Positions 6,534-63,670 of a DNA stretch of 64,000 nt are shown in pieces. Both the position numbers and the translations under genes were made by a program. The DNA is taken from positions 124,001 to 188,000 of the forward strand of contig NIVC01000003.1 in the NCBI GenBank assembly GCA_002269645.1, read 5' to 3'. Position 1 is the stretch's first letter. Each line of letters opens with the position of its first letter. The notes beneath the pieces were generated by a model. The model was not told where the DNA came from. It searched no databases and saw only the letters and a program-made list of their open reading frames with translations. The stretch comes from Macrostomum lignano (taxonomy: Eukaryota).

Positions 6534-7330
6534 TTGTGCAGGGCAATCTATATTTCTACAATTTGATACTTATAAATTTGTGTCAAAAACTAAGCAAATG
6601 ATTTGTTATAATGTATGTATTTTCCAAAATATTTTTGTGAATTAATTTTTGTTTCAAAACTACTGAAAATTTTAGTATAAATAGACGCAATCAGAGCCGA
6701 GGAGGAAGCAACTTGCCTTTGTGCAGTTCCTACGAAAGAAGTAAGCATACTAAGAAAGGAGTGTTCCAAATAAATATAAGAGGAGCTGTTCTCCGAGTTA
6801 TTCATTTGCAGACATAAGAGTGAAGTAGACCAAAGCATTTACAGTATACATTACTGAGAAGTGGAAGTAGTAAGAGGATACAAAGTAGATCCAAAGTCGA
6901 TAAATAACTGGAGGCTATGACCCTCTGATCTCAGTAACACCCAAGGACTTGCAGAGTACATAAAATACATATACCAGTATAGCTAGTAGACCACTCAGGC
7001 CAAAAGTACAGTAAACACTACCAGAATAACAGAGGAATAATACTTATAAGGGCTAATAGTTTCCAAGAATAAATACTTAGACTAAATGCTCAGATAAATA
7101 CTCAGACTAAATACTAAGATATAACATGCTCAGATCAATTCTAAGAAACATTTCTCGGATTATTCTAAGATTGATAAACTCATAATTTATTAATTGGCTA
7201 ATCCTGGTGGCAGCTACCAACTTAAAGATTAGTGTAAGAAGTTAGCCCTAGCACAGCTTGGTGACATAACGGTAGGATAATTTCAATAAGAGGAAACACT
7301 GCTGTTACAACTTTGGTGGCATTGTGGAAT
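6534..7330. repeat. Copy A of a diverged ~0.75-kb direct duplication (copy B at ~8473-9250)
   Basis: Collinear alignment by eye from GCAGGGC(A/G)ATCTATATTTC to GG(C/T)AGCTACCAAC; differences are mostly transitions. Confidence 0.85.
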
Positions 7331-13486: not shown

Positions 13487-14573
13487 TATATATAATAATA
13501 TATATTATTATTCATTATAGTTTTTTCTTTTTAGGCCATAGAATATGGTTGACTAAAAGTAGGATATGAAATCATATTTAAGACCTAGGTTTAGTTTCAA
13601 TTCAAGATAGCTTATATATAATCTTTGACCTGAATATTTTTTATAAAAAAGGAAAAACTAGTTTTGATTTATTTAGTGACATAGATTAGCTATAGAAATA
13701 AGCTATTATAATAAGCATTTTTAAGCCTATTTTTTTAACTCTTTAGTATTTTTACCCTTTTTAATATTTATTAGCTTTTTAGAATAAGTTTCTAGTTGTA
13801 CTAATTAGTTAACATTCAAGTTAAAAATTTTCCATTATAAATAGTGGTTTCTATTTAATGCTTATAGACTTTTGTCTTACCTAAAAAGCTTATATTGTCT
13901 TTTATAAAGTTTATTCCAATATTTTTTTGAAATCTATTATTATATTAAATGAATAAAAAAATTTAGGCAAAATGTTTTATTGTAGATACTTTAAAGTGTT
14001 AGATAAATCATATTTAAGCAAAGTGATTTAGTTATGGTAGCTATATACCCTAAAGCATAAAATAGCATATTGGCTAATACATTTGCTAATAATAAATAAT
14101 ACTAGAGGTCCATTATTGCCTATTAGTAAAAAAACAGTAATATTCTTAAGATTTATGATTTTCTAATGAGGTTGTTTCTTTTAGCTCATAAGTATCCTTA
14201 ATTTTAATCAACCTAAAACCTATTGTCAAACATTAAATGATTGAAATCTAAACTATAGAATAATATGTGTTTTATCATAAAGAATTTGTTACCTAAATTT
14301 TAAGTATAAAGTTAGTATAAAGAAAAGTATTTCTGATAATTTTCTAAAATATTATTGCTATCTTTATGACTAGTTTGTAGCTTTTCATTTTGAAACAAGA
14401 CAATATAACCAATTTATCTTATATTTTAATTGTTTCTGAATTTTTGTTATATATACTAAGGTTTTTGTGCTTATGAATGTTGATTTCAAAATTTAAATGT
14501 AAACAATAATATTTGGATATTAATGTCTGTCACTCCACTATAAAAAATATATTTATTTTTCTTTTTGCTGCTG

Positions 14574-16456
14574 ATGCTTGAGCAGATTAAATTGGTCTGC
14601 AAGAAGCTGGCTGCTAGTGAGGAGCCAGTCCGAATCAAGGGCTTCTTAGGGGCAAAGAAGCTTCTTTCTGGTGCAGAGGCAGTATCATTTGATAACATGA
14701 TGCTCATAATGAAAGGCCTGCACTACATGCTGTGGATGCAGGACCAGCCAATTAAGCACGAGGACATTGTAGACATGATCTGCTCTCTTCTGGGTGCGAT
14801 ATCCAGTCCAAAGAACAAGTTGAACTTTATTAAAGCGCTATTCGAGACAGAAGCCAGAGAATGGTCTTCAATCGACTTCTGGCGCGCGGACAAGTTCATG
14901 ATGCTCGTGCGTCGCTTCCTCAAAGCCTCCCTGGCGTTTTTGCAGTCCAACGAATGGAGCAGCGAACTGGTCAGCCAGTTCGTTCAAATCCTCAGGGACA
15001 GCGTTGTTAATGCCGATTTCAACCAGCCTAGCAACGGCCTGAAGCTGCACTTGGCTGACATTGTTGCGAGGAGCTCAGCATCACCACCGCCGGTCCAGAT
15101 GCTGTGCTGGCAATTTTGCGACCCTTCATCGATATTGTGGCGTCCGGGATGCACAAGCACCACGTGGTGGACAAGGTTGAGCAGGCGGTGCTGCAGTATC
15201 TGGCCGATCAGGCACTCTACCAGGCGGAGTCCGCGCAGCAGGACTCGGTTGAGTCGGAAGTCTGCTTAGTTGACATCGACATGGAGGAGCTGTGCAAGTG
15301 CCTCTTTGCCCTGGGATCAGATCCCAGCGTGAAAAGCCCCAATCGAAAGCGACTGTTTCACTGGTACAAGACGTTTAGAAATATTCTGAGCGGCAATGTT
15401 GGACCGGAGGGCCTGGTGCCCGCCGGACCGACCCTGGGCAAGGAGGAAATCACAGCGGCGGTTGCCCGCCTCATTAAACAGGAGAACAAGCGGAGAAAAA
15501 AAAAGAAAGCAAAACGTCTAGTTGAGGACGGCCAAGCAGGGAGTTCGAATACGCAGCCCAGTGCACCAGCGTCAGGCGCTAAGCTGGCCAAGGTCAAGAC
15601 CCCGAAAGCTTTGGCCAAGCAAAAGCAGACTGTTGGAGGCGCCAAGTCTTCATTGGCTTTGGCAAAAAAGAAAGCCATTGCTGCTGGCGCTTCACCTCAG
15701 GGTGCCAGCATTGAAGCGCAGCCTGGAGTGGCCAAGTCCCCCCAAAGCCCAAGAACTGCCAAGCAGTCTGGGCAGTCGCCAAAATCCAATGAGAAATCGC
15801 CCGCCATCCAAGGAGCGCCTGAAGTTTCAGCCAAAGAGAAGTCGCCTGTCATAAAAAAATCGCCAAAAGGCCCAGCCCCGGCCAAAGCCAAAGAAAAATC
15901 GCCTGCTGTCCAGCAATCGCCCCAGGTCTCAAATAATAAAAAATCACCTCAGGGCTTGGCCAAAGAGAAATCGCCCGCCACCTCGAAGTCTCCCAAGGAC
16001 TCTGTCAAGCCGGAGTCCCCAGCCGGTGGCAAGCGCAAGCAGCCGTCTTTGTCGCCTTTGACGGCTCCCGGTGCGGGCAGCAGTACGCCGCCATCAGCTA
16101 AGCGCGCGCGCATGTCGCCCGCAGTGTCAGCGGACTGCAGCGTCACCCCGGCATCGCAGTCCGCAACGCCGAAGCAGCAGCTGCTTCTGTCCACGCCCCA
16201 GAGTGCTGACTGCGACAGCGAGGGAAAACAGAATCGTTCCGTAACATTTGGCAAGATATTTCGCAAGCGATTCAACAAGAAGGACCGGGTTGTTACGCCG
16301 ACGGCTTCGGGTGACGATAAAACGCCGGAGCGGTCGATTTTGAAGAAGTCGAGTGGCTTGGGCTCCTCGCTGAGGCTGCGCTCGCCAGGCTCCAAGAAGT
16401 CGCCAGGCTCCAAGAAGTCGCCGGCCTCCAAGAAGTCGCCGCAGAATCGCGTTTGA
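14574..16456 (+). CDS. RRP1B: RRP1B/Nop52-family ribosome biogenesis protein, intronless, with a 1-nt frameshift near 15064-15068
   Basis: Nop52 motifs KGLHYMLWMQDQP, EWSSIDFWRADKFMMLVRRFL and NGLKLHLADI lie in frame 1. EEL...LRPFIDIV and NRKRLF lie in frame 2 (ORF 15104..16456). The basic S/T-P-rich tail contains RSVTF (RVxF) and SILK PP1-docking motifs, as known for RRP1B. Confidence 0.85.
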
Positions 16457-30411: not shown

Positions 30412-31669
30412 CTGCAAATGTCAAGAGAAACTCGGGAGCGTCAGTCTGGGGTGATTTTAGCTCCACTGCAACCAATTTTTCCCGTATCCATATCTAAGGC
30501 TGCTGAGGTATATTGCAAAGAGATGCTACATGTAGTTTATTCCAAAACTTGTACTGCATTTTTGGCTCCCCAACGCTAAGATACTAAGCTAAAAAATACT
30601 ACTAGCGCTTCACAAACTTATGCAGATGTCAGGCTGTAGGGTTGGTGTTAGGGTTAAGGTTTAGGGTTAGGTTCAGGGTTATAGCGGTAAGATTCGAGTT
30701 AGGGCTAGGGTTAGGGTAGCTTATAACTTAGCTCATGTAGCTTATTAAAAATGTTTATCATAGAAGCGTCATGCAAAAAATTATAGAAGCATCATGCAAA
30801 AACTCATGGACAAAATATTAAATTTAGGGTTATGGTTAGGGTTAAGGGTTAGAAGTTTGACAAGGGATTTTTTAAGATTTCAAGGCTACATGTAGCTTAT
30901 TAAAAAAACGTGTATTGCATTTCTTTGGCTCCCCAACGGGGGGCGTAGATTGCTAGTCCATATCTAAGGCCGTATCTAAATCCCCCCGCGCTGCATATCC
31001 GTATATTTGATTATTTCCCTCAACAGTTCTGCCATCATTTACTATAGCATAGTGATAAAGTAAAGAATGACTAATAATTCCTAACCTATAGGGCTTCGAA
31101 AATCTGTTGCTTGAGTCCCCGACTCGGGGAATATATAAATCCTTCAGGCCCTCGGATTCTCCTCCTTTCTGCCCTAGATAACCTGCTGGATTTGTATTCC
31201 TTCTTGATTTTGCGGGCGGGCCGAGAAACGACATTCTTCGGCCCGCGAGTCAAACTGCATTTGCTTCAGTCTAAGTTCAGTGCAAGTCCTGATTCTCGGC
31301 CCGCAAGAAAATGGAATTTGTCTATGGCACAAAATGCAAACTGTATTTCATTTTAGCTCTGAGCCTAAAAGAGCGACTGACAAAGTAATAAGCTCGTAAT
31401 TAGTCTAACTTTTTATTAAAACTGAATTTCATTAACTCCTGACCCGAGCGTTCTGAGAACATGATAGACTACTCCTGTATAAAAGGAGGCGAGATTTCTG
31501 GGTTGCAGCGCGAAGAAATCGACTTTGTATGCCAACTCCGTGGCCGTGGGCGAATGTTCAATCAGTACACTGGCTTGCCTGTGCCTGGAATTGGAGTCAG
31601 CAAGGCGCTCGACAACGGCCTGTTGGATGATCTAGTAAACGATCTTTCTGCTGAAGCGAGCAGCGACAA

Positions 31670-33690: not shown

Positions 33691-34118
<428 letters not shown>

Positions 34119-36799
34119 AAGGAGGCAGGGAGGGAGGAAGACGGACAGGCAGATGGATTGCTCAAGTTCAGCTCAAGAACCATCAAGCGCCCCCACACAG
34201 CGCATTCCTCTGCTTCAAAGAAGTCAATTCCAGAGCCAGGCAACTCTTCGGCAGCAAGCCGGTCCGTGGCCTCGTCCGCCTCCTGACCCAGTTCTCAGTT
34301 CCCCGATCAAGTCTATGAAGATTGCATTGCCGCAAGCGGGCTGAGACTGCGCAATGAAATTGCCGTGGCGCCTCGTCGCAACCGCCGCCCCCAGCCCCCC
34401 AATTTACTCGCCCCTCCGGCCACGTCAGCGGCTCGCTTGGCTGGCCAATTGTTTTCTAAAATAGGAGATTCCAGTAAATAGGAAAATGCCCGCCTGCCCC
34501 ATTAGAGCCAATCACCGGCCTCGCATCCGAGCGCCCCGCGGCTCCCCCGGCGCCGGGCCCGGCGGCTACTTATTGGGGCGAGGCGGTCGCCCAGAAGCCT
34601 GCGCGCACCTGCCGACTCCGCCACCGACGCCAAGAGAGGAGGATCAGCTTCCACTACCGACTGTTGAAAGTGAGGAAAATTCTTCAGGATAATTTCTGAG
34701 CCTATTCAGAGAGTCTGTGAGTTTCGCCATCGCAACTTTCGCTTATTTGCCACACTCTAGGTGGGGGCTGGAAACTGTTCTGATCCTCTCAAGATTGCTG
34801 CTCAGTGCGGCGCATTCTCCCACCTTCTCACTTTGGACCCAGCAGAGGGTGGCTGCTGACAAAGTCCTTGTTGTTTCTGCTGCAACTTCTCGCTATCTGA
34901 GTCAGCAGTGGCGAGTCCTCAGCTCTCCTTTGTCTCACAGAGCTGAGCCGGCTGGGATTTGGACTCGGGCAGTGCAGCTCAACTGCAGTGGGAGGGAGTA
35001 CTTGAGTGCCGGCTGCTTCATGGGCATTGTTGAATGGCAGAGCCACAAAACACTTGCAACAATTGCTGATAGCTCGCATTGGGCCTCGAAACCAAACTGC
35101 CTGGATGCGGGGAAGGAAGGAGCCGCAGAGCTGCAGTCCCTGCCTGCCGATCTGCTGCTACTTCGCCACATTCTGACAGGCAGAACCAGCGCGTCAGACG
35201 CAAGCCCTCCTCAAGAGGAGCAAGTGGAGCTGCTCTCCACGTCAGAACCATGATTCCCCCCTTGTGCCCAGCTTTCGGATGTCTCGGCTGGCCCGTTTTT
35301 GCAGCAGCTGTCCAAAATTTTCCTAATTTAGAAGATGAGAGAAGAGACTGAATGGAGCAGCGGCTTTGCCATCGATCAGCCCTCGGTTCGATTGCTTGCA
35401 TTGTGCTCGCGCTGCTCGGCGAACGCTGAATGCCGCTTCCCACGCTGCCACGACCAGCGAGTCCCGGGCAGGTGGGCGGGGAGTGGGGATAATTGCTTTC
35501 TTCCTCTGCCCGGCAACGCGATTGGCAATGTAAAACTGGGGAACCGGACCGCGGAATTCGCTTCCACGAGCCCGGCTGCCCGCCGGATCTCCGAGGCCGA
35601 CTGCGGCAGGGCAATAATTTCTTGAGTCGGTCAACATGCCGGAGAAGGAGGTAATTACCACCTGTTTGCTCTGGCCACCCAGAGCCACTCGCACAGCACA
35701 CAAAGTTTTTTCTTGTTCGCCATTTCTTGCCTGCTTCGATGAATATTCAATTGCGAGCGGAACATTTTCTGCTCCCGGCTGCTCCTTGATGCTCAAGTTT
35801 AGTGACAAAGTGGCCTCGCTAATCTTTCAGTTCCTCAAGCAGCTCTTTCCCGAGTGGAAGGTGTGAGGGAAGTTTTTCCCCGACTTCTCCCCATCCGACT
35901 GGTTCGTAAATCACAGTCAAGTGGCGCCCGCCCCGATGAAGAGGGAGCCGGGCGGGGGCGGGCATGGGAGGAAAGCGGGACAAATGGCTGCTCAGATGAT
36001 CAATGACTCGAAGGTGGCCGGGGCAGCCAGGCGGCAAAGCGAATGGGATCCGGGGGCTCCAGTTTCATGCTGCAGTTCGGTGTTGCTGGCTGCCTCTTTC
36101 CGCCCCCTCCCCCTGTCTGTCCGCCCCTCCCCCCTCCCCTATCTCGGCGATCGGTGAAGCACGAAAATCAAAGTGGCCAGCCAGTTCAGGAGGAAGCCCG
36201 TGTGAGAAGACTGATGACGAAGAGAGGCTGGAGTTCCCCAGATCCCGAAGCGGGAAACTTGGCGCTGACAGTTTTTGCAGAAAACTCGGAGCTGACCGAT
36301 TTCAAAGTTTAAAAAATCGATGTCACCAATCGGGTGACAAATGGGGGGGGGGGCAGAGGCCCATCTCTCCCGCTCGGTTTTATGGCCCAAGCTGAAGAAG
36401 GTCAGAGGAAACCTCCTGAGGTCTCTTGTGTGGCCGTGAGCTATTCCGCTGCTCTCAGCTACTTGGCAGTTTCTCCTGGAGAGTTGCACTCAGGGCATCG
36501 GTGCAGCCATGGTTCGGGTGGTTAGGCAGAATCGCATTTTTATGTCAACACCGTGGTTAAATAGCTGCATGAGAAGCTCATTGAGAAGCTGCTGCTCACC
36601 TTCACTGCCTCATCATCAATGATTCGGATCAGTGCGCTCTCTCTGAGCAACGATACCCCCACGGCTGGGCTTGCTTGTCACGCTACGGCAAATTTGACGA
36701 AGAAGTGCATGTGGCATCCCGGAGAGGAGCCGCGAGCTTTTCTGCCTTCAACTTTGAAGTGCTTGAGGACCTGCTCGCCCATCGGGTCCTCGCCCTCCA

Positions 36800-39841: not shown

Positions 39842-40586
<745 letters not shown>

Positions 40587-47653: not shown

Positions 47654-48641
<988 letters not shown>

Positions 48642-49340
48642 GAGCTCGAATTCCGGTCATATAAAGCCAGCTGTGCTTGCAAGCTACAGTGCGTGATTCA
48701 GGTGTGACTGAGTAACTCAGGATCGGCTGAGCTCTTGACGCCCGTCTCGGGAGGGGGCGGTTGCTGGGAATTCAGCAGGCATTTCCTGAATTGCGCGTGG
48801 CGGGTAGGGCGGCACAGCAATGCAGGCAGCCAGAGCCGCAGGATGGGTATGGCTAGTCTAACGCGGAGATGCAGCGCAGATGCTGGACGGGTGACGGGAA
48901 GCCGTGGGAGGCGGAGCAGCCCCATGCGAGCATTGTTTTAATTCTACAGCTGGGGAATCAATACAGTGCAGTGCGGCGGCGCCACCCTCCCGCTCCGCCT
49001 CAGCGGCTGCAGCGAGCTTCGAAAAACTGCTGCGGCTTCCCCGGGCCCGGCGCTTCTTTGCTCCCCATTTGAGGGCGGCTCAGCAGCCGCTGAGACAAAG
49101 CCTAAAGCGTTTTCCGTGTTGCGGAACCGCCGCGGGATGATGCAGCTGCTGCTGATGCTGCCGCCGGAGGGCCGCTTGAAGAAAATCGAGGAGGCTGTCT
49201 TGTTTGCGCCGCGTATTTGTGAGACCCAAAGTTTTTCTTGACCGCCTGGTTCCTGAATCAGTAGATGCGATTGAGGATAATTTTGTTTGCAACTGCCAAA
49301 ATGTTTGCGATAGTTGCTACTCTCAGTACTGTAGTTGTTT

Positions 49341-49699
<359 letters not shown>

Positions 49700-49769
49700 T
49701 TCATAAGGCAGTTTGAAACTGCAAACCACGCACTCGGAAGATATTGAAGGTTACCAGTTGTCGAATGTT

Positions 49770-49825
49770 CGAAAAAAACCGATATTTCGGCCCAGACTGG
49801 GCCTTCGTCAGGGTTTATTTATTCG
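49770..49825 (-). ncRNA. Minimal type I hammerhead ribozyme (copy 1)
   Basis: Minus strand: CGAA-UAAAU-AAACC CUGACGA A GGCCCA-GUC-UGGGCC GAA AUAU C/ GGUUU-UU-UUCG. Conserved core, helix II hairpin, palindromic AUAU helix III and helix I with an internal loop. Predicted cleavage at 49781/49780. Confidence 0.88.
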
Positions 49826-51644
49826 GGTTTAAAAACAAATATATTGGCAGTGAAGTTATTGTAACATAATTTCAATATATATATATGCTACTTTTGGGGT
49901 GCACTGAGCAGTGTTGAGTAAAGATGTGTACGTATAATTAGTTAAAAACGTGAGTTGAAGCACGCTGATTGGTTAAAGATTGGCAGCTTAAAGCCTTGCA
50001 CAAAAAATATTAAAGATGTTAGGTGCTATAGAAAAACAGATTTAGAGCGTAGAAGTGTATGAATAAGCATCTTGAAAAGTTCAACAAATAAGTTATTTAC
50101 GCCCGTAGAATTGAGAACAAATATTAAATTAAAACAGAGCACTGAGAACTTTTCAAAAAGAAGTGCAAGTAAATAGATGTTATTACATAAACAGTAAATA
50201 AATTGAGTCGCCAGGCAGGCCACTAGTTGCAGTTGGCGGCGTCTGGTCACAGATCGCCGCCTGCACAGCCCCTGGTCACAGGCGACTGGGCACTGCAGAT
50301 CAGTTGAGGCTAGATTATCAGTAGTAGTAGCACTAGTAGTTGCAGTAGTAGCTCGTAGTAGTAGTAATGGAAGTAGTAGTAGTACAAGTATTAGTAGAGT
50401 AGTAGTAGAGCAGTCGTAGGCGTAGTCGTAGTAGAGGCGTACTGGTAAGCAGTTATTTGAAGTAGCCAGGCAGGCCACTAGTCGCAGTTGGCGGCGTCTG
50501 GTCACAGATCGCCGCCTGCACAGCCCCTGGTCACAGGCGACTGGGCACTGCAGATCAGTTGAGGCTAGATTATCAGTAGTAGTAGCACTAGTAGTTGCAG
50601 TAGTAGCTCGTAGTAGTAGTAATGGAAGTAGTAGTAGTACAAGTATTAGTAGAGTAGTAGTAGAGCAGTCGTAGGCGTAGTCGTAGTAGAGGCGTACTGG
50701 TAAGCAGTTATTTGAAGTAGCCAGGCAGGCCACTAGTCGCAGTTGGCGGCGTCTGGTCACAGATCGCCGCCTGCACAGCCCCTGGTCACAGGCGACTGGG
50801 CACTGCAGATCAGTTGAGGCTAGATTATCAGTAGTAGTAGCACTAGTAGTTGCAGTAGTAGCTCGTAGTAGTAGTAATGGAAGTAGTAGTAGTACAAGTA
50901 TTAGTAGAGTAGTAGTAGAGCAGTCGTAGGCGTAGTCGTAGTAGAGACGTACTGGTAAGCAGTTATTTGAAGTAGCCAGGCAGGCCACTAGTCGCAGTTG
51001 GCGGCGTCTGGTCACAGATCGCCGCCTGCACAGCCCCTGGTCACAGGCGACTGGGCACTGCAGATCAGTTGAGGCTAGATTATCAGTAGTAGTAGCACTA
51101 GTAGTTGCAGTAGTAGCTCGTAGTAGTAGTAATGGAAGTAGTAGTAGTACAAGTATTAGTAGAGTAGTAGTAGAGCAGTCGTAGGCGTAGTCGTAGTAGA
51201 GACGTACTGGTAAGCAGTTATTTGAAGTAGCCAGGCAGGCCACTAGTCGCAGTTGGCGGCGTCTGGTCACAGATCGCCGCCTGCACAGCCCCTGGTCACA
51301 GGCGACTGGGCACTGCGGATCAGTTGAAGCTAGATTTTCAGTAGTAGTAGCACTAGTAGTTGCAGTAGTAGTAGTAGTGGTAGTAGAGTAGTAGTAGTAC
51401 AGTCGTAGTCGTAGCCGTAGTCGTAGTAGTGTCGTGCGTCTTAAATATTCAGCTGCAGAAATAGTACTCTTGCTTATCCCAAGTAGATTTTTGGCGGAGA
51501 ATAGCTCGTATACGAAGATATTTTGTTGACAAACATGGCGAGCCTCAATAATAGTCCGGTCCTGGGTACAGATATTCATAAGGCAGTTTGAAACTGCAAA
51601 CCACGCACTCGGAAGATATTGAAGGTTACCAGTTGTCGAATGTT

Positions 51645-51700
51645 CGAAAAAAACCGATATTTCGGCCCAGACTGGGCCTTCGTCAGGGTTTATTTATTCG
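51645..51700 (-). ncRNA. Minimal type I hammerhead ribozyme (copy 2)
   Basis: Identical to copy 1; predicted cleavage at 51656/51655. Confidence 0.88.
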
Positions 51701-53265
51701 GGTTTAAAAACAAATATATTGGCAGTGAAGTTATTGTAACATAATTTCAATATATATATATGCTACTTTTGGGGGTGCACTGAGCAGTGTTGAGTAAAGA
51801 TGTGTACGTATAATTAGTTAAAAACGTGAGTTGAAGCACGCTGATTGGTTAAAGATTGGCAGCTTAAAGCCTTGCACAAAAAATATTAAAGATGTTAGGT
51901 GCTATAGAAAAACAGATTTAGAGCGTAGAAGTGTATGAATAAGCATCTTGAAAAGTTCAACAAATAAGTTATTTACGCCCGTAGAATTGAGAACAAATAT
52001 TAAATTAAAACAGAGCACTGAGAACTTTTCAAAAAGAAGTGCAAGTAAATAGATGTTATTACATAAACAGTAAATAAATTGAGTCGCCAGGCAGGCCACT
52101 AGTTGCAGTTGGCGGCGTCTGGTCACAGATCGCCGCCTGCACAGCCCCTGGTCACAGGCGACTGGGCACTGCAGATCAGTTGAGGCTAGATTATCAGTAG
52201 TAGTAGCACTAGTAGTTGCAGTAGTAGCTCGTAGTAGTAGTAATGGAAGTAGTAGTAGTACAAGTATTAGTAGAGTAGTAGTAGAGCAGTCGTAGGCGTA
52301 GTCGTAGTAGAGGCGTACTGGTAAGCAGTTATTTGAAGTAGCCAGGCAGGCCACTAGTCGCAGTTGGCGGCGTCTGGTCACAGATCGCCGCCTGCACAGC
52401 CCCTGGTCACAGGCGACTGGGCACTGCAGATCAGTTGAGGCTAGATTATCAGTAGTAGTAGCACTAGTAGTTGCAGTAGTAGCTCGTAGTAGTAGTAATG
52501 GAAGTAGTAGTAGTACAAGTATTAGTAGAGTAGTAGTAGAGCAGTCGTAGGCGTAGTCGTAGTAGAGACGTACTGGTAAGCAGTTATTTGAAGTAGCCAG
52601 GCAGGCCACTAGTCGCAGTTGGCGGCGTCTGGTCACAGATCGCCGCCTGCACAGCCCCTGGTCACAGGCGACTGGGCACTGCAGATCAGTTGAGGCTAGA
52701 TTATCAGTAGTAGTAGCACTAGTAGTTGCAGTAGTAGCTCGTAGTAGTAGTAATGGAAGTAGTAGTAGTACAAGTATTAGTAGAGTAGTAGTAGAGCAGT
52801 CGTAGGCGTAGTCGTAGTAGAGACGTACTGGTAAGCAGTTATTTGAAGTAGCCAGGCAGGCCACTAGTCGCAGTTGGCGGCGTCTGGTCACAGATCGCCG
52901 CCTGCACAGCCCCTGGTCACAGGCGACTGGGCACTGCGGATCAGTTGAAGCTAGATTTTCAGTAGTAGTAGCACTAGTAGTTGCAGTAGTAGTAGTAGTG
53001 GTAGTAGAGTAGTAGTAGTACAGTCGTAGTCGTAGCCGTAGTCGTAGTAGTGTCGTGCGTCTTAAATATTCAGCTGCAGAAATAGTACTCTTGCTTATCC
53101 CAAGTAGATTTTTGGCGGAGAATAGCTCGTATACGAAGATATTTTGTTGACAAACATGGCGAGCCTCAATAATAGTCCGGTCCTGGGTACAGATATTCAT
53201 AAGGCAGTTTGAAACTGCAAACCACGCACTCGGAAGATATTGAAGGTTACCAGTTGTCGAATGTT

Positions 53266-53321
53266 CGAAAAAAACCGATATTTCGGCCCAGACTGGGCCT
53301 TCGTCAGGGTTTATTTATTCG
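53266..53321 (-). ncRNA. Minimal type I hammerhead ribozyme (copy 3)
   Basis: Identical to copy 1; predicted cleavage at 53277/53276. Confidence 0.88.
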
Positions 53322-55141
53322 GGTTTAAAAACAAATATATTGGCAGTGAAGTTATTGTAACATAATTTCAATATATATATATGCTACTTTTGGGGGTGCA
53401 CTGAGCAGTGTTGAGTAAAGATGTGTACGTATAATTAGTTAAAAACGTGAGTTGAAGCACGCTGATTGGTTAAAGATTGGCAGCTTAAAGCCTTGCACAA
53501 AAAATATTAAAGATGTTAGGTGCTATAGAAAAACAGATTTAGAGCGTAGAAGTGTATGAATAAGCATCTTGAAAAGTTCAACAAATAAGTTATTTACGCC
53601 CGTAGAATTGAGAACAAATATTAAATTAAAACAGAGCACTGAGAACTTTTCAAAAAGAAGTGCAAGTAAATAGATGTTATTACATAAACAGTAAATAAAT
53701 TGAGTCGCCAGGCAGGCCACTAGTTGCAGTTGGCGGCGTCTGGTCACAGATCGCCGCCTGCACAGCCCCTGGTCACAGGCGACTGGGCACTGCAGATCAG
53801 TTGAGGCTAGATTATCAGTAGTAGTAGCACTAGTAGTTGCAGTAGTAGCTCGTAGTAGTAGTAATGGAAGTAGTAGTAGTACAAGTATTAGTAGAGTAGT
53901 AGTAGAGCAGTCGTAGGCGTAGTCGTAGTAGAGGCGTACTGGTAAGCAGTTATTTGAAGTAGCCAGGCAGGCCACTAGTCGCAGTTGGCGGCGTCTGGTC
54001 ACAGATCGCCGCCTGCACAGCCCCTGGTCACAGGCGACTGGGCACTGCAGATCAGTTGAGGCTAGATTATCAGTAGTAGTAGCACTAGTAGTTGCAGTAG
54101 TAGCTCGTAGTAGTAGTAATGGAAGTAGTAGTAGTACAAGTATTAGTAGAGTAGTAGTAGAGCAGTCGTAGGCGTAGTCGTAGTAGAGGCGTACTGGTAA
54201 GCAGTTATTTGAAGTAGCCAGGCAGGCCACTAGTCGCAGTTGGCGGCGTCTGGTCACAGATCGCCGCCTGCACAGCCCCTGGTCACAGGCGACTGGGCAC
54301 TGCAGATCAGTTGAGGCTAGATTATCAGTAGTAGTAGCACTAGTAGTTGCAGTAGTAGCTCGTAGTAGTAGTAATGGAAGTAGTAGTAGTACAAGTATTA
54401 GTAGAGTAGTAGTAGAGCAGTCGTAGGCGTAGTCGTAGTAGAGACGTACTGGTAAGCAGTTATTTGAAGTAGCCAGGCAGGCCACTAGTCGCAGTTGGCG
54501 GCGTCTGGTCACAGATCGCCGCCTGCACAGCCCCTGGTCACAGGCGACTGGGCACTGCAGATCAGTTGAGGCTAGATTATCAGTAGTAGTAGCACTAGTA
54601 GTTGCAGTAGTAGCTCGTAGTAGTAGTAATGGAAGTAGTAGTAGTACAAGTATTAGTAGAGTAGTAGTAGAGCAGTCGTAGGCGTAGTCGTAGTAGAGAC
54701 GTACTGGTAAGCAGTTATTTGAAGTAGCCAGGCAGGCCACTAGTCGCAGTTGGCGGCGTCTGGTCACAGATCGCCGCCTGCACAGCCCCTGGTCACAGGC
54801 GACTGGGCACTGCGGATCAGTTGAAGCTAGATTTTCAGTAGTAGTAGCACTAGTAGTTGCAGTAGTAGTAGTAGTGGTAGTAGAGTAGTAGTAGTACAGT
54901 CGTAGTCGTAGCCGTAGTCGTAGTAGTGTCGTGCGTCTTAAATATTCAGCTGCAGAAATAGTACTCTTGCTTATCCCAAGTAGATTTTTGGCGGAGAATA
55001 GCTCGTATACGAAGATATTTTGTTGACAAACATGGCGAGCCTCAATAATAGTCCGGTCCTGGGTACAGATATTCATAAGGCAGTTTGAAACTGCAAACCA
55101 CGCACTCGGAAGATATTGAAGGTTACCAGTTGTCGAATGTT

Positions 55142-55197
55142 CGAAAAAAACCGATATTTCGGCCCAGACTGGGCCTTCGTCAGGGTTTATTTATTCG
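55142..55197 (-). ncRNA. Minimal type I hammerhead ribozyme (copy 4)
   Basis: Identical to copy 1; predicted cleavage at 55153/55152. Confidence 0.88.
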
Positions 55198-55459
55198 GGT
55201 TTAAAAACAAATATATTGGCAGTGAAGTTATTGTAACATAATTTCAATATATATATATGCTACTTTTGGGGGTGCACTGAGCAGTGTTGAGTAAAGATGT
55301 GTACGTATAATTAGTTAAAAACGTGAGTTGAAGCACGCTGATTGGTTAAAGATTGGCAGCTTAAAGCCTTGCACAAAAAATATTAAAGATGTTAGGTGCT
55401 ATAGAAAAACAGATTTAGAGCGTAGAAGTGTATGAATAAGCATCTTGAAAAGTTCAACC

Positions 55460-56630
<1,171 letters not shown>

Positions 56631-59811: not shown

Positions 59812-62524
59812 GCCGCGGGCCCTCGTTGCCATGGAGAATCCCGGCTGGTCGGGCAGCCCGCTGGCTCAGAAATCCTCGGCCGCCGGGCAGCCGCCGCAGC
59901 GCGGGCCGGCAGCGCCTGAACTCGTCACCCCGGGCGTTGTGGTTCACCCGGCCGAGGCCGGCACCCCGGCCACCCTCGTCCACAAGGGCAGCCGAGTGCT
60001 GATGCTGCGGGCGAGGGCCGGACAGACCGCCTTCCCGATGTCCAGCCTGCAGGCGGCGACCGGCGGCGGCGGCGGCAGCGGCGGCGGCCCGTCCACGTCC
60101 GGGACGTCCGGACAGCAGCCGCACCACTCGCTGCAGCCGCTGCCGCTCAAGTCGGTGGCAGGCGACTACGTCAGGTGGGCTGTTCTTTGTTTAAATCGGC
60201 GCGGAGTTTTTAGTTCGATGACACAAAACAAAAACAAGAACTGACATTGAAAGGTGCATGTGAACTTGAACTTACCTCAGTACCTGGTAGACGTCTTACC
60301 AGAGTCCCTCGCCTTGAACTTTCCACCCAGAGAGAAGCGAGCTGACAAGCAATACGGCAAAGCTAGAAAGAAATTACGTCTGATGTACTTTCAGAGAAAA
60401 GCCGACTGTTCTAAGGTCTGCAGACTTTCTTGCCATAGAATCACGCGGCAACCTCGTGTGCATTCTGCCTCCTATGTATATTTAAACGGACGCTTGTCAT
60501 CAGAAAATCTACAAACGTCAGAATACGATCTTCCCCTTAAAAGTACATGTGGCTCAACTTAATGATCGTTATGCCGTGTTGTTTGCCTGCTCTCTGTCAG
60601 GTAGTCAGGTAGTCTATGGCCGGGAGGCTAGTCAGGTAGTCTAAGGCCGGGAGGCTAGTCAGGTAGTCTATGGCCGGGAGCTAGTCAGGGAGTCTATGGC
60701 TGGGAGGCTAGTCAAGTAGTCTATGGCCGGAAGCTAGTCAGGTAGTCTATGGCCGGGAGCTAGTCAAGTAGTCTATGGCCGGGAGGCTAGTCAGGTAGTC
60801 TATGGCCGGGAGGCTAGTCAGGTAGTCTATGGCCGGGAGCTAGTCAGGTAGTCTATGGCCGGGAGGCTAGTCAAGTAGTCTATGGCCGGAAGCTAGTCAG
60901 GTAGTCTATGGCCGGGAGCTAGTCAAGTAGTCTATGGCCGGAAGCTAGTCAGGTAGTCTATGGCCAAAAGTTAAAAAGTGAGAATCCTAAATGAAAAGCG
61001 CTATTTTGAGCTAATTTTGGGCTGTAGTAGGGACCAAAGGAGACGCAACAGAGATTTCATGCAATCTTAAGGCTCTGGAATGCTTTCTTGTCTGCTACCG
61101 CACAGTTTTAATAGAAGTGTAACAACGCCAACTAATAAAATAATTTTACCTCCCTCAATCAATGTCACCTCCAATCAATGTTAATTTACATTTGCAATTT
61201 ACAATCAGCTAATTGCTTTATTGCTCGCTAATCATGACGCCCGGCTACTCAGCCAGACTGTGACCCTGTGAGAACAATTACCTGATTGCAGCCCATTGTA
61301 CTGTACCGCCTGTGAGCGGCACGTTGGCCGGATCTTTGCTTTGTCAAATAACTAAACTGTGCCCCGTATGCATTCCCAGGCCAGATGTCTGGATCAGCAG
61401 CCAGCCCACAGAATGGCCACAGCAGCCTCAGCGCAGGTGACTCGGGGTTTCATTGCATTTTAAATAAAGCTGCAATTGTCTCCAGTGTGGGAACTGCTGA
61501 GGCAGGTGTTTGACAGGGAGAGACAGGAAGAGACAGGGAAAGACAGGGAGAGATAAGGGAGAGACAGGGAGAGACAAGGGAGAGACAGGGAGAGTCACGG
61601 ACAGACAGGGACAAACAGAGACAGACAGGGACAGACAGGGACAGACAGTAAGAGACACAGACAGACGGGGAGAGACACAGACAAACAGAGACAGGCAGAG
61701 ACAGGCAAGACAGACTGGGACAGGCAACAGACAGGGACAGACAGGGACAGACAGGGACAGGCAGGGACAGACAGGGACAGACAGGGACAGACAGGGACAG
61801 ACAGGGACAGACAGGGACAGACAGGGACAGACAGGGACAGACAGGGACAGACAGGGACAGGCAGGGACAGACAGGGACAGGCAGGGACAGACAGGGACAG
61901 ACAGGGACACAGGAACAGGGACAGGCGGATTCAGCACTCAGAGGCCAGTCTGCACGCATGCATCAAACGGCCAATCACTCAGTTTGACTCCCCCGCCGAC
62001 TTCAGAGGTGCCAACTTCTTCGTCCGAGACGAGTCCCCCGTGCCGGACTCGGGGCCTCGTCTGCAGCACCAGCGCCAGCGGGATCGTCGAGACGACAGCG
62101 AAGACAGCGGCAGCGACGGTCAAAGCGAAGGCGACCCGATGGCGTCATCGTCAGAGGCGGCTGCTCTAGCAGCGGCGGCCGCGGTGGGCGCTTCGATGCA
62201 GTCAGATGAGCATGAGAATGTCCTGGCGCAGGCGCAGTACCAGGCCAGGCAGACTTTTCCCAGGTAGGAGCAGCGAGACCGCTGACTGGGTGATTCATAG
62301 AATGAGTGAGTGACTGACTGACTGACTGACTGACTGACTGACTGACTGACTGACTGACTGACTGACTGACTGACTGACTGACTGACTGACTGACTGACTG
62401 ACTGACTGACTTGAGTGAGTGGGTGACTGACTGACTGACTGACTGACTGACTGACTGACTGACTGACTGACTGACTGACTGACTGACTGACTGACTGACT
62501 GACTGACTGACTTGAGTGAGTGGG

Positions 62525-62568
<44 letters not shown>

Positions 62569-63670
62569 TGACTGACTGACTGACTGACTGACTGACTGAC
62601 TGACTGACTGACTGACTGACTGACTGACTGACTGACTGACTGACTGACTGACTGACTGACTGACTGACTGACTGACTGACTGACTGACTGACTGACTGAC
62701 TGACTGACTGACTGACTGACTGACTGACTGACTGACTGACTGACTGACTGACTGACTGACTGACTGACTGACTGACTGACTGACTGACTGACTGACTGAC
62801 TGACTGACTGACTGACTGACTGACTGACTGACTGACTGACTGACTGACTGACTGAATTATTGAGTGAGTGAGTGAGTGAGTGAGTGAATCCAAAATGAAG
62901 CCAAAATAAAATGAGATCAAAACACTGATCGTGGAATCCACTGCAAAAAGAACCAAAACTTCGGCATTTCAGGTTCGTGATTCTCCACTACTCTCCGTTC
63001 AAAGCAGTGTGGGACTGGGTGATCCTCATGCTGGTGCTGTACACCGCGGTGTTCACTCCGTACACGGCGGCATTCTTGCTCAACGAGGACAAGACCAAGA
63101 TGAAACTGAATGAGGTGCAGGTTTTGAATTGAAAGATTTCAGTTTCAGATAGTGTAGATAGCGGATAGATCAGTTCTAGACAACTGATGGATCAGTCCTA
63201 GACAGCTGATAGATCAGTCCTAGACAGCTGATAGATCAGTCCTAGACAGCTGATAGATCAGTCCTAGACAGCTGATAGATCAGTCCTAGACAGCTGATAG
63301 ATCAGTCCTAGACAGCTGATAGATCAGTCCTAGACAGCTGATAGATCAGTCCTAGACAGCTGATGGATCAGTTCTAGACAGCTGATAGATCAGTCCTAGA
63401 CAGCTGATAGATCAGTCCCAGACAGCTGATGGATCAGTCCCAGACAGCTGATAGAACAGTCATAGTCAGCAGATAGACCCAACCCACTTCCAGGACTCGA
63501 AGACTCGCTCCTCCGTGTCGCAGTCAACCACCCGGATCCTCTGGTGATCATTGATCTCATCGTGGACGTCACCTTCATCGCGGACATCCTCATCAACTTC
63601 AGGACAACCTACGTGCACAATGGCGAGGTGATCAGCGACCCGCAGAAGATCGCCCTGAACTACATGAAAG
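59812..63670 (+). CDS. KCNH2: ERG-type (KCNH2/6/7-like) voltage-gated K+ channel, N-linker to S2 region; continues past the right edge
   Basis: Exons 59812-60174, 62006-62263, 62973-63114 and 63494-63670. [36 protein letters not shown] (S1) and [27 protein letters not shown]...KIALNYMKG (S2) are ERG-specific. An apparent 1-nt deletion sits in the C run at 63531-33. The symbol indicates subfamily, not strict orthology. Confidence 0.9.
60597..60965. repeat. 27-28-bp minisatellite (GCTAGTCAGGTAGTCTATGGCCGGGAG), intronic
   Basis: About 13 copies. Confidence 0.95.
61515..61925. repeat. (GACAGGGACA)n-type repeat, intronic
   Basis: Direct reading. Confidence 0.92.
62310..62855. repeat. (GACT)n microsatellite, intronic
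   Basis: Direct reading. Confidence 0.97.
63175..63460. repeat. 22-bp minisatellite (CAGCTGATAGATCAGTCCTAGA), intronic
   Basis: About 13 copies. Confidence 0.95.

What the first reader, a model, noticed from the sequence alone, without database searches (positions are those of the whole stretch)
49699..55459. Tandem array of kilobase-scale units each carrying a dimer-type minimal hammerhead ribozyme (large retrozyme-like element)
Seen: four identical minus-strand motifs AAACC-CUGACGA-A-GGCCCAGUCUGGGCC-GAA-AUAU-C/GGUUU with distal CGAA/UUCG pairing, spaced 1875, 1621 and 1876 nt apart. Helix III is a loopless palindrome (AUAU). The units are nearly identical, differing by one 255-bp subrepeat and single bases, so amplification is recent (or partly an assembly effect). 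Established: such minimal type I hammerheads occur in Penelope pLTRs and in metazoan non-LTR retrozymes, fold as dimers across tandem copies, and release monomers that can circularise. Described metazoan retrozyme monomers are typically a few hundred nt. Inference: a transcript would self-process into 1.6-1.9-kb linear or circular RNAs, an unusually large retrozyme with internal modular repeats and no RT.
Basis: partly seen in the sequence, partly recalled or inferred. Interest (0 to 1): 0.85.

Follow-up and report, generated by a model that had tools for sequence, protein, structure and literature searches.

The report
Microsatellite-targeting flatworm retroelement with minimal hammerhead
The array is real: a young, non-coding mobile element of the flatworm Macrostomum lignano that carries a Penelope-type minimal hammerhead ribozyme motif and always sits inside (TATC)n microsatellites. 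It is a larger, site-specific relative of known animal "retrozymes", not a new kind of system.

Summary
Four identical 41-nt hammerhead motifs lie on the minus strand, spaced 1875, 1621 and 1876 nt apart. The units differ only by one 255-bp subrepeat and one 1-bp indel. The motif has every invariant hammerhead core base and three of the four hallmarks published for Penelope-like-element (PLE) minimal hammerheads; the fourth, covariation, could not be tested. My descriptor found it 4 times in the window and 0 times in 300 shuffles. No Rfam hammerhead model detects it.

- The organism is Macrostomum lignano or a very close relative.
- The element is a dispersed family, seen at four loci in two subfamilies.
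- Every copy lies inside a long (TATC)n microsatellite in one orientation. All resolved copies share a 3' junction 85 nt downstream of the predicted cleavage site, and their 5' ends vary.
- The block from a CCAAT/TATA-like region to the hammerhead is the most conserved part between subfamilies.

These features indicate target-primed retrotransposition of a non-autonomous, PLE-like element. The 432/517-aa ORF is probably fortuitous.

Not shown: self-cleavage, 1.4-1.9-kb circular RNAs, or the reverse-transcriptase partner. Published flatworm and Xenopus motifs of this type cleave poorly in vitro.

Verdict: a new member of a known kind, with unusual size and strict target choice.

The parts
55460..56630 (-). 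Upstream flank: (TATC)n microsatellite as read on the element strand, 1.17 kb. Presumed target DNA.
   Evidence: TRF row (AGAT)n, 292.8 copies, 99% matches; sequence.
55153..55458 (-). 5'-truncated first unit (unit positions 1316-1621). It contains CCAAT (55347-55338), a TATA-like run, AATAAATAAA and hammerhead copy 1.
   Evidence: Junction ...TATCTATCTG|GTTGAAC... read; unit coordinates.
55148..55188 (-). Minimal type I hammerhead motif, copy 1. Predicted cleavage lies between 55153 (C17) and 55152.
53277..55152 (-). Full unit A, 1876 nt, with 4.7 copies of the 255-bp subrepeat (53703-54898).
53272..53312 (-). Hammerhead motif, copy 2. Cleavage lies between 53277 and 53276.
   Evidence: The 66-nt segment 53257-53322 folds into the hammerhead shape as both MFE and centroid, -18.4 kcal/mol, z = -2.2.
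51656..53276 (-). Full unit B, 1621 nt, with 3.7 subrepeat copies (52082-53022).
51841..51850 (-). CCAAT-box-like AACCAATCAG (unit positions 1427-1436). The same motif is at 55347-55338, 53471-53462 and 49974-49965.
   Evidence: Read from the sequence. It lies in the block most conserved between subfamilies. A promoter role is inferred.
51748..51762 (-). TATA-like CATATATATATATTG (unit positions 1515-1529), about 65 nt upstream of the hammerhead. It is repeated in every unit.
   Evidence: All three full L002 units compared share a 2-bp AT deletion here.
51651..51691 (-). Hammerhead motif, copy 3. Cleavage lies between 51656 and 51655. The AATAAATAAA immediately 5' overlaps helix I.
49781..51655 (-). 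Full unit C, 1875 nt, with 4.7 subrepeat copies (50206-51401).
49776..49816 (-). Hammerhead motif, copy 4. Cleavage lies between 49781 and 49780.
49696..49780 (-). 85-nt 3' tail, the true 3' end of the insertion: ...GCAGTTTCAAACTGCCTTATGAATATC, then (TATC)n. It contains a small hairpin, GCAGU-UUCAA-ACUGC.
   Evidence: The same junction occurs in L001 (twice) and, with sequence changes, in L003. The tail fold is not significant, z = 0.15.
49341..49699 (-). Downstream flank: (TATC)n microsatellite, 0.36 kb.
   Evidence: TRF row (ATAG)n, 89.8 copies.
53523..55076 (-). 517-aa ORF. Equivalent ORFs are at 51902-53200 (432 aa) and 50026-51579 (517 aa). It starts 77 nt after the cleavage site and is probably not a gene.
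   Evidence: Its only Pfam hit is sub-threshold (New_glue, 22.9 bits against a cutoff of 31). The first subrepeat is read in a different frame from the others, and variable columns split 6/13/5 by codon position. Its only database relatives are copies of the same element.

Best explanation
This is a young family of non-autonomous, Penelope-like-element-type retroelements (a large non-LTR 'retrozyme') in Macrostomum lignano or a very close relative. It inserts specifically into (TATC)n microsatellites.

Unit layout. Each 1.4-1.9-kb unit has an 85-nt tail, a short unique segment, 2.7-4.7 copies of a 255-bp minisatellite, and an AT-rich block with CCAAT and TATA-like motifs. Then comes AAUAAA and a minimal type I hammerhead that lacks a helix III loop.

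Proposed mechanism. Steps 1-3 are inferred. In step 4 the junction pattern is shown and its reading is inferred. In step 5 the variation in unit and subrepeat number is shown, and unequal exchange as its cause is inferred.
1. Transcription starts from the internal promoter-like block just upstream of a hammerhead and runs through downstream units.
2. Two hammerheads can pair through their palindromic AUAU to form a double hammerhead. [quoted passage not shown]
3. An RT/endonuclease supplied in trans, most likely by an autonomous PLE, nicks (TATC)n/(GATA)n DNA. It primes cDNA synthesis on the element's ...AUAUC(UAUC)n 3' region.
4. The genomic 3' end lies 85 nt past the cleavage site. The template must therefore span an intact hammerhead junction, so it is either uncleaved multimeric RNA or religated circular RNA. 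That would also yield the multi-unit arrays and the randomly truncated 5' ends.
5. DNA-level unequal exchange later changes the numbers of units and subrepeats.

My estimates for the separate claims: genuine PLE-type hammerhead motif 0.9; retrotransposed (TATC)n-specific non-autonomous element 0.85; partner is a PLE 0.6; efficient in vivo self-cleavage with kb-size circles 0.35.
For: Hammerhead motif. All invariant core bases are present: C3 U4 G5 A6 N7 G8 A9, G12 A13 A14, A15.1/U16.1 and C17. The hallmarks listed for metazoan PLE minimal hammerheads are also present. These are an unpaired nt between A9 and G10.1, a G10.1-C11.1 pair, palindromic 15.2-16.2 with no loop 3, a long helix II (6 bp) and a short helix I (5 bp) (sequence; criteria). 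There were 0 descriptor hits in 300 shuffles. The hammerhead shape is the MFE and centroid fold of the 66-nt segment.

Organism. The Nop52 ORF is 87% identical, and the unit ORF 100% and 97% identical, to M. lignano proteins.

Dispersed family. Arrays occur on NIVC01000001.1 (L001) and NIVC01002743.1 (L002). A diverged single copy lies on NIVC01001007.1 (L003). The unique flanks of the window and L002 are unrelated.

Target and junctions. Every resolved flank at all four loci is (TATC)n, 0.36 to 7.8 kb, and all copies have the same orientation. The L002 3' junction itself lies in an assembly gap. The window, L001 and L003 share the 3' junction at unit position 85. The 5' ends differ: position 1316 in the window and two points about 10 nt apart within a subrepeat in L001 and L002; L003 starts in its own 214-bp subrepeats. 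L002 has a 7-nt filler. ATATCT also occurs at unit positions 37 and 135 but is never the junction.

Conservation between subfamilies. The promoter-like block is 93% identical and the hammerhead 97.6% (40/41). The tail is 78%, the region further upstream 68%, and the copy overall about 83%.

Concerted arrays. Window units are identical. All three full L002 units compared share a private 2-bp deletion.

Transcription. The Mlig_3_7 gene models over the element lie on the hammerhead strand. Those models were built from RNA-seq assembled with the TACO setting --no-assemble-unstranded.

Literature. PLEs show 5' truncation, partial tandems, hammerheads near their 3' ends and a microsatellite insertion bias. 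Non-LTR retrozymes are argued to be non-autonomous PLE derivatives.
Against: - No Rfam hammerhead model matches, even at E <= 10 in an 86-nt search.
- There is no covariation. The 14 copies seen are almost identical, and the one change in L003 weakens helix II with a C-A mismatch.
- Helix III of the dimer is only four A-U pairs. Comparable flatworm and Xenopus motifs cleave poorly or not at all in vitro.
- No RT or GIY-YIG ORF was found in the 131 kb examined. The longest non-repetitive open frame between stops is 285 aa, and the only long ORFs given a Pfam scan matched Nop52. The PLE partner is therefore unproven.
- Units within one array differ in subrepeat number (1876/1621/1875; 1888/1365/1618). 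Simple rolling-circle copying of one circle does not predict this.
- The predicted circular RNA is only 48% paired, so it is not rod-like.
- An AAUAAA overlapping helix I offers a competing 3'-end pathway.
Confidence: 0.65

Rival explanations
1. The element is the same kind of non-autonomous retroelement, but it is mobilised by a LINE whose RT recognises a 3' tail ending in microsatellite repeats (the CR1/L2/Rex-type 'stringent' mode), not by a PLE. The hammerhead would then be an acquired or inherited passenger.
For: The element has a fixed 3' end followed by simple repeats and 5' truncation. A small hairpin sits 10 nt before the repeats, and it survives an A-to-G change as a U-G pair in L003. 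No PLE ORF was seen in 131 kb. That LINE/SINE pairs use tails ending in microsatellite-like repeats is my own knowledge, not something tested here.
Against: The hammerhead has the specific PLE minimal architecture, including the bulged nucleotide 5' of helix II. Head-to-tail partial tandems and microsatellite insertion on both flanks are described for PLEs. LINEs described with ribozymes use HDV-like ones. The tail fold is not significant.
Confidence: 0.12
2. The element is an inert satellite. One ancestral PLE end landed in (TATC)n and was then spread and expanded only by DNA-level duplication and unequal crossing-over. The hammerhead is a fossil with no current role.
For: L001 carries a 1.5-kb duplication (2001-3520 versus 5376-6895, 99-100% identical) with the same 5' junction but different continuations. 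This shows DNA-level remodelling or assembly redundancy. Subrepeat numbers vary within arrays. The 2026 preprint proposes local amplification by unequal crossover. Minimal hammerheads have low in vitro activity.
Against: At least three different 5' truncation points share one 3' junction, at loci with unrelated unique flanks. Two subfamilies both lie in (TATC)n. The promoter-hammerhead block is far better conserved than the rest (93-98% versus 68-83%), which argues for selection on that block. Copies at different loci are nearly identical, indicating recent spread.
Confidence: 0.1
3. The array is a tandemly duplicated protein-coding gene family encoding a Thr/Cys-rich repeat protein of 432-517 aa. 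Each gene has its own CCAAT/TATA promoter and a hammerhead in the 5' leader.
For: A long ORF starts 77 nt after the cleavage site and lies downstream of the promoter-like motifs. The 255-bp subrepeat is a multiple of 3. M. lignano annotation calls proteins here.
Against: The first subrepeat is spaced 230 nt from the next, so the same nucleotides are read in another frame. The (ACT)n tracts are read as T, L or Y. There is no third-position excess (6/13/5). There is no Pfam hit above threshold and no homologue outside copies of the element. In L001 the ORFs are shorter, 273 and 319 aa.
Confidence: 0.04
4. The array structure is an assembly artefact, a collapsed or expanded repeat. Only a single unit exists.
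For: The units are perfectly identical. The M. lignano genome is notoriously hard to assemble and contains redundant blocks. L002 has an N gap inside its array.
Against: Multi-unit arrays with different unit-length orders occur at separate loci in an independent assembly. One array is interrupted by a hAT-like MITE with its own 8-bp target-site duplication.
Confidence: 0.03

Closest known systems
Minimal hammerheads in the terminal repeats of metazoan Penelope-like elements, notably Cercyon PLEs of the flatworm Schistosoma mansoni (Cervera & de la Pena 2014, PMC4209133)
   Same: Both have the type I topology with no helix III loop, and palindromic 15.2-16.2 positions for dimer formation. Both have an unpaired nucleotide between A9 and G10.1, a G10.1-C11.1 pair, a long helix II and a short helix I. 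Copies occur kilobases apart in head-to-tail repeats, and the host is a flatworm.
   Different: There is no RT/GIY-YIG ORF between the motifs. Helix II is 6 bp, against 7-8 bp in S. mansoni and 6 bp in D. virilis. Copies are nearly invariant, whereas the published families show high sequence variability.
Metazoan non-LTR retrozymes (Cervera & de la Pena 2020, PMC7229834; Li, Clavereau & Pollet 2026 preprint)
   Same: Both are non-coding tandem repeats of low GC (44-45% here). Each unit carries a type I hammerhead, and dimeric action is expected. Both are proposed to be non-autonomous partners of PLEs.
   Different: Units here are 1365-1888 bp, against 150-450 bp typical and 972 bp maximum reported. 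The hammerhead is the minimal type, without loop-loop contacts. Units contain an internal 255-bp minisatellite. The element has a defined 3' end 85 nt past the cleavage site and a strict (TATC)n target. The 2020 review states that metazoan retrozymes show no conserved motif that would identify the autonomous element mobilising them. Circular RNA has not been shown here.
Microsatellite-biased PLE insertion: (TA)n for Naiad and Hydra, (CA)n and (C)n for Chlamys (Craig et al. 2021, PMC8557442)
   Same: Both show insertion into simple repeats, which hides target-site duplications. Both show 5' truncation and partial tandems.
   Different: The target here is the tetranucleotide (TATC)n, and the element has no ORF. 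The adjacent inverted copies and 30-40-bp extensions described for PLEs were not seen. L002 has only a 7-nt filler.
EN-minus PLEs (Athena) and Terminons, which carry reverse-complement telomeric repeats next to a hammerhead (summarised in PMC8557442)
   Same: A hammerhead sits close to a 3' end whose simple repeats can base-pair with the DNA end used as primer.
   Different: Those elements attach to chromosome ends and encode an RT. This one sits in internal microsatellites, and its repeat-complementary end is 85 nt beyond the hammerhead.

Membership tests
Hammerhead ribozyme (catalytic motif) | Invariant core C3 U4 G5 A6 N7 G8 A9 / G12 A13 A14, with A15.1-U16.1 and H17 at the cleavage site | tested here: met
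   CUGACGA ... GAA-AUAU-C read. The motif is identical in the four window copies, and the core is intact in the 10 copies seen in L001-L003.
Hammerhead ribozyme (catalytic motif) | Three helices around the core | tested here: inconclusive
   Helix I (AAACC/GGUUU plus distal pairing) and helix II (GGCCCA/UGGGCC) form in the MFE fold. Helix III (AUAU) cannot close in cis and needs a second copy. The isolated 4-bp A-U duplex is weak.
Hammerhead ribozyme (catalytic motif) | Match to the Rfam hammerhead covariance models | tested here: not met
   There was no hammerhead hit at gathering score or at E <= 10, in searches of 64 kb, 6.5 kb and 86 nt. I take this to mean the models assume a closed helix III, but I did not check that.
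Hammerhead ribozyme (catalytic motif) | Self-cleavage activity | not testable with these tools
   This needs in vitro transcription of dimer constructs or mapping of RNA ends.
PLE-type minimal hammerhead (Cervera & de la Pena 2014) | [quoted passage not shown] | tested here: met
   There is an extra A in CUGACGA-A-GGCCC.
PLE-type minimal hammerhead (Cervera & de la Pena 2014) | G10.1-C11.1 pair, long helix II, short helix I | tested here: met
   Helix II is 6 bp and closed by G-C. Helix I is 5 bp.
PLE-type minimal hammerhead (Cervera & de la Pena 2014) | Palindromic 15.2-16.2 positions with no or a palindromic loop 3 | tested here: met
   AUAU lies directly between GAA and C17.
PLE-type minimal hammerhead (Cervera & de la Pena 2014) | Consensus families with compensatory changes | tested here: inconclusive
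   The 14 copies carry four variants, each in a single copy. Three of them (a base after C17, a homopolymer length, a 1-nt deletion) could be assembly errors, and L003 has a G-to-A change. There is no compensatory pair.
Penelope-like element (autonomous) | ORF with an RT and a GIY-YIG endonuclease between the terminal repeats | tested here: not met
   The unit ORF has only a sub-threshold New_glue Pfam hit. No non-repetitive open frame longer than 285 aa exists in the window or L001-L003. The element is therefore at most a non-autonomous derivative.
Penelope-like element (insertion style) | 5' truncation, head-to-tail partial tandems, microsatellite insertion bias, hammerhead near the 3' end | tested here: met
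   Four loci have variable 5' ends. The window, L001 and L003 share one 3' junction 85 nt after the hammerhead site; the L002 3' end lies in an assembly gap. (TATC)n forms every resolved flank.
Non-LTR retrozyme | Tandem repeats, each with a type I hammerhead, non-coding, low GC | tested here: met
Non-LTR retrozyme | Monomer of a few hundred nt (150-450 typical; 51-972 reported) | tested here: not met
   Units are 1365-1888 bp.
Non-LTR retrozyme | Accumulates as linear and circular monomeric RNA | not testable with these tools
   The only evidence is indirect: RNA-seq-derived gene models on the sense strand.

The most novel reading that the evidence does not exclude
The element is an active, site-specific 'giant retrozyme'. 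Dimeric minimal hammerheads would release 1.4-1.9-kb RNAs that are circularised and then copied by a PLE RT, primed on nicked (TATC)n at the fixed ...AUAUC site. The constant junction 85 nt past the cleavage site would then be a genomic footprint showing that the template carries a religated hammerhead junction. M. lignano can be made transgenic, so it would be a tractable animal system for the unresolved PLE/retrozyme life cycle. The element might also contribute to the growth of kb-scale (TATC)n tracts.
Probability: 0.25. Interest if true: 0.7.

Novelty: new member of a known kind. Interest (0 to 1): 0.42.

Why it matters
How animal retrozymes and PLEs are mobilised, and what their minimal hammerheads do, is still open. 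The 2020 review states that metazoan retrozymes carry no motif pointing to their partner or priming mode. This family offers three fixed landmarks: a single target sequence, a single 3' junction, and a conserved promoter-hammerhead block. It occurs in near-identical, apparently recent copies in a laboratory flatworm with transgenesis. That makes concrete predictions possible about template form, priming site and partner RT. It also warns annotators that TransDecoder-style gene models over such elements are spurious. Retrozyme surveys that cap the repeat period at 1 kb will miss units of this size.

Tried and rejected
- Rfam at gathering and at permissive thresholds found no hammerhead family. 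It gave only chance hits: mir-34 (E = 8.3) on an AT hairpin and MH_s25 (E = 4.2).
- Exact-protein look-ups of the 517-aa unit ORF and a 450-aa neighbouring ORF found nothing on record.
- An exact scan of metagenome contigs for the hammerhead gave 0 hits. I judged degenerate scans uninformative and did not run them.
- A first homology search with the whole ORF was swamped by low-complexity words. A second search with low-complexity parts removed found the divergent L003 copy.
- BLAST of flanks with the dust filter on returned nothing, because the L001 flanks are pure microsatellite. I repeated it without dust.
- Tail RNA structure is not significant, z = 0.15. The 255-bp subrepeat fold is marginal, z = -1.7. 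The whole-unit circular fold has z = -4.1 but is only 48% paired, so it is not viroid-like.
- A coding reading of the ORF was rejected.
- A Helitron reading was considered from its known hallmarks (my own knowledge) and dropped. The element shows neither a fixed 5' end nor a CTRR 3' end.
- I could not search for an autonomous partner, because no tool here searches the M. lignano genome by DNA.
- A literature search for hammerheads in Macrostomum found nothing relevant.

Full report
**1. Observation**

The minus strand of 49500-55700 was read directly. The 41-nt string AAACCCTGACGAAGGCCCAGTCTGGGCCGAAATATCGGTTT occurs four times with no mismatch and only on the minus strand. The positions are 49776-49816, 51651-51691, 53272-53312 and 55148-55188. 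None of 100 shuffles gave a match. I cut the sequence at the predicted scissile bond, after the C of GAAATATC. This gives units of 1876, 1621 and 1875 nt. They have no substitutions and differ by one 255-bp subrepeat and one C-run indel. TRF finds the 255-bp subrepeats and shows the array is bracketed by tetranucleotide repeats at 49341-49699 and 55460-56630.

**2. Is it a hammerhead?**

The core reads C3 U4 G5 A6 C7 G8 A9. One extra A follows, then helix II (GGCCCA-GUC-UGGGCC), then G12 A13 A14, then A15.1 U15.2 A16.2 U16.1 and C17. Helix I is AAACC/GGUUU and can be extended by distal CGAAU/AUUCG pairing.

- *Support.* The 66-nt segment adopts exactly this shape as both MFE and centroid structure (-18.4 kcal/mol, z = -2.2). 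A descriptor I wrote hits only these four sites in the window and hits nothing in 300 dinucleotide-preserving shuffles. A relaxed version run over the window plus three M. lignano loci, 131 kb in all, finds only members of this family.
- *Against.* No Rfam hammerhead model reports it, even in an 86-nt search at E <= 10. Helix III cannot form in one molecule, because AUAU has no loop. The intermolecular four A-U pairs are weak on their own.

Cervera and de la Pena (2014) defined 'min-HHRs' of metazoan Penelope-like elements. [quoted passage not shown] The authors list four features that emerged without being part of their descriptor:
- families with covariation;
- a G10.1-C11.1 pair;
- palindromic 15.2-16.2 positions.

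The window motif shows the last three, plus the helix sizes. The first could not be tested. I therefore treat the motif as a genuine PLE-type minimal hammerhead. Activity is another matter. The S. mansoni motif gave no cleavage as a monomer and only low cleavage as a dimer or trimer. Only one of nine predicted Xenopus retrozyme dimers cleaved in vitro.

**3. Organism and other copies**

A Nop52 ORF at 14565-15269 (Pfam E = 5e-44) is 87% identical to a Macrostomum lignano protein. The ORF inside the unit is 100% and 97% identical to two M. lignano 'hypothetical proteins'. Fetching their contigs from assembly GCA_002269645.1 gave L001 and L002, and a later search gave L003.

- **L001** carries an array that is interrupted by a 1.2-kb hAT-like MITE. 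It also carries a duplicated partial copy.
- **L002** carries an array of at least four units that ends in an assembly gap.
- **L003** carries a single copy of a diverged subfamily, about 83% identical, with 214-bp rather than 255-bp subrepeats.

**4. The key finding: insertion anatomy**

At all four loci every resolved flank of the element is (TATC)n, always in the same orientation relative to the element. The tracts measure:
- 0.36 and 1.17 kb in the window;
- more than 2.4 kb and 7.8 kb in L001;
- 3.8 kb upstream in L002, plus a tract after the gap;
- 0.77 and 2.5 kb in L003.

The 3' junction is the same wherever it is resolved. It reads ...CTGCCTTATGAATATC|TATC... in the window and twice in L001, and ...CTGCCTTTTGCATATC|TATC... 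in L003. This is unit position 85 counted from the cleavage site. The L002 3' end lies in an assembly gap. The 5' junctions differ. In the window it is at unit position 1316. In L001 and L002 it lies at two points about 10 nt apart within a subrepeat, and L002 has a 7-nt filler (TTTAAAC). In L003 it lies in that subfamily's own subrepeats.

The unit contains ATATCT at positions 37, 81 and 135, yet only the site at 81 is ever the junction. The end is therefore a defined element terminus, not just opportunistic microhomology. The unique flanks of the window and L002 share no similarity.

A fixed 3' end, variable 5' truncation, head-to-tail partial tandems and microsatellite targets make up the insertion style described for PLEs. 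It is what target-primed reverse transcription produces. The insertion unit is offset from the hammerhead-delimited monomer. Every genomic copy contains an intact hammerhead junction followed by the 85-nt tail. The RNA that was copied must therefore have been either uncleaved or religated (circular).

**5. Unit anatomy and conservation**

Positions below refer to the 1621-nt unit:

| Unit position | Feature |
|---|---|
| 1-85 | 3' tail |
| 77 | ATG of the long ORF |
| about 228-1198 | 255-bp subrepeats |
| 1417, 1427 | two CCAAT motifs, the second being AACCAATCAG |
| 1515 | TATA-like run |
| 1579 | AATAAATAAA, overlapping helix I |
| 1581-1621 (+5) | hammerhead |

Identity between the young subfamily and L003 varies by segment:

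| Segment | Identity |
|---|---|
| 340 nt upstream of the hammerhead | 93% |
| Hammerhead | 97.6% (40/41) |
| Tail | 78% |
| Region further upstream | 68% |
| Whole L003 copy | about 83% |

This uneven conservation is the best available evidence that the promoter-like block and the hammerhead are under selection. It comes from one pairwise comparison and includes no compensatory change. The single hammerhead difference in L003 creates a C-A mismatch at the top of helix II, leaving four pairs.

Gene models over the element in all three loci lie on the hammerhead strand. The Mlig_3_7 models come from RNA-seq assemblies filtered with the TACO setting --no-assemble-unstranded. Sense transcription is therefore likely, though I did not examine it directly.

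**6. The ORF**

Each full unit has a 432- or 517-aa ORF. I consider it fortuitous, for these reasons:
- The (ACT)n-rich tracts have no stop codon in any frame of that strand and are read variously as T, L or Y.
- The first subrepeat is spaced 230 nt from the next, so it is translated in a different frame.
- Variable columns split 6/13/5 by codon position.
- There is no Pfam domain above threshold.
- The only relatives are copies of the same element.

**7. Age and array dynamics**

Across nine full units from three loci, the 677 unique positions compared show one substitution plus homopolymer or AT-run indels, some of which may be assembly errors. All three full L002 units compared share a private 2-bp deletion. 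The window units are identical to one another. Each array therefore looks internally concerted.

Unit lengths within arrays nevertheless differ by whole subrepeats: 1876/1621/1875 in the window, 1888/1365/1618 in L001, and about 1616-1619 in L002. In L001, a 1.5-kb block that includes the 5' junction is duplicated with different continuations. DNA-level unequal exchange, or RT slippage between subrepeats, therefore probably also shapes the arrays, although assembly redundancy could explain the L001 duplication. Simple rolling-circle copying of one circle is not sufficient.

**8. Mechanism**

- *Shown.* The motif; the family; the target; the junctions; the pattern of conservation.
- *Inferred.* Transcription from the internal block; double-hammerhead cleavage to unit-length RNA; possible circularisation by a host ligase; nicking of (TATC)n and priming on the AUAUC(UAUC)n end by a trans-acting RT, most probably from a PLE.

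An alternative for the constant junction is read-through of source copies into their flanking (UAUC)n, which would then anneal to new (GATA)n targets. Both readings require an uncut last hammerhead. The arrangement recalls EN-minus PLEs, which place repeats complementary to their target next to a hammerhead.

**9. Comparison and novelty**

The element works like, and is best filed with, non-autonomous PLE derivatives (non-LTR retrozymes). It differs from described retrozymes in four ways:
- a minimal rather than canonical hammerhead;
- an internal minisatellite;
- strict tetranucleotide target specificity with a defined terminus.

It is not an autonomous PLE, because it has no RT or EN. Nothing in the searched literature describes hammerheads in Macrostomum. 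I rate it a new member of a known kind, of moderate interest.

**10. Limits**

- No tool here can search the M. lignano genome by DNA. Copy number, the partner element and empty sites are therefore unknown.
- Cleavage, circles and promoter activity are untested.

Noticed in passing
window 14565-16456 (+): A Nop52/RRP1-like nucleolar protein gene. The Nop52 domain is in ORF 14565-15269 (Pfam E = 5e-44). A Lys/Ser/Pro-rich continuation lies in a different frame (15104-16456), implying an intron or a frameshift. The closest named relative is an M. lignano protein at 87% identity.
   Followed up: partly
window, whole: About 36% of the window lies in TRF-detected tandem arrays. These include many kb-scale tetranucleotide tracts: (CAGG)n 33694-34152, (TCTG)n 39842-40586, (CTGT)n 47654-48642 and (TGAC)n 62303-62887. 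There are also dozens of 12-60-bp minisatellites. The element sits only in the (TATC)n tract.
   Followed up: partly
window 30637-30717: A short, degenerate telomere-like repeat (TAGGGT / TAGGGTTAGGTT) in an internal position.
   Followed up: no
L001 7514-8740: A 1.2-kb MITE-like insertion inside one unit of the element. It has terminal inverted repeats CAGTGTTGGGCA...TGCCCAACACTG and an 8-bp target-site duplication CTTACCAG, so it looks hAT-like. It shows the array is old enough to have been hit by another transposon.
   Followed up: partly
L001 2001-3520 versus 5376-6895: A 1.5-kb duplication, 99-100% identical, that includes imperfect microsatellite, the element's 5' junction and a partial unit. 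One copy ends in the tail plus (TATC)n, and the other continues into further units. This is either unequal exchange or assembly redundancy.
   Followed up: partly
window 51689-51698 and equivalents (unit positions 1579-1588): AATAAATAAA, a canonical poly(A) signal, overlaps the 5' strand of helix I. Polyadenylation 10-30 nt downstream would fall inside the hammerhead, so it may compete with self-cleavage for 3'-end formation.
   Followed up: no
L002 10001-16085: The annotated gene model BOX15_Mlig029014g1 spans a 3.8-kb (ATCT)n tract and ends inside the first unit of the element. It looks like a chimeric read-through transcript, not a real gene.
   Followed up: no
window 49838-49881, 51713-51756, 53334-53377, 55210-55253 (+): A weak mir-34-like hairpin match (16.8 bits, E = 8.3, far below the gathering score) on the opposite strand, just upstream of each hammerhead and overlapping the TATA-like run. 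It is almost certainly a chance match.
   Followed up: no
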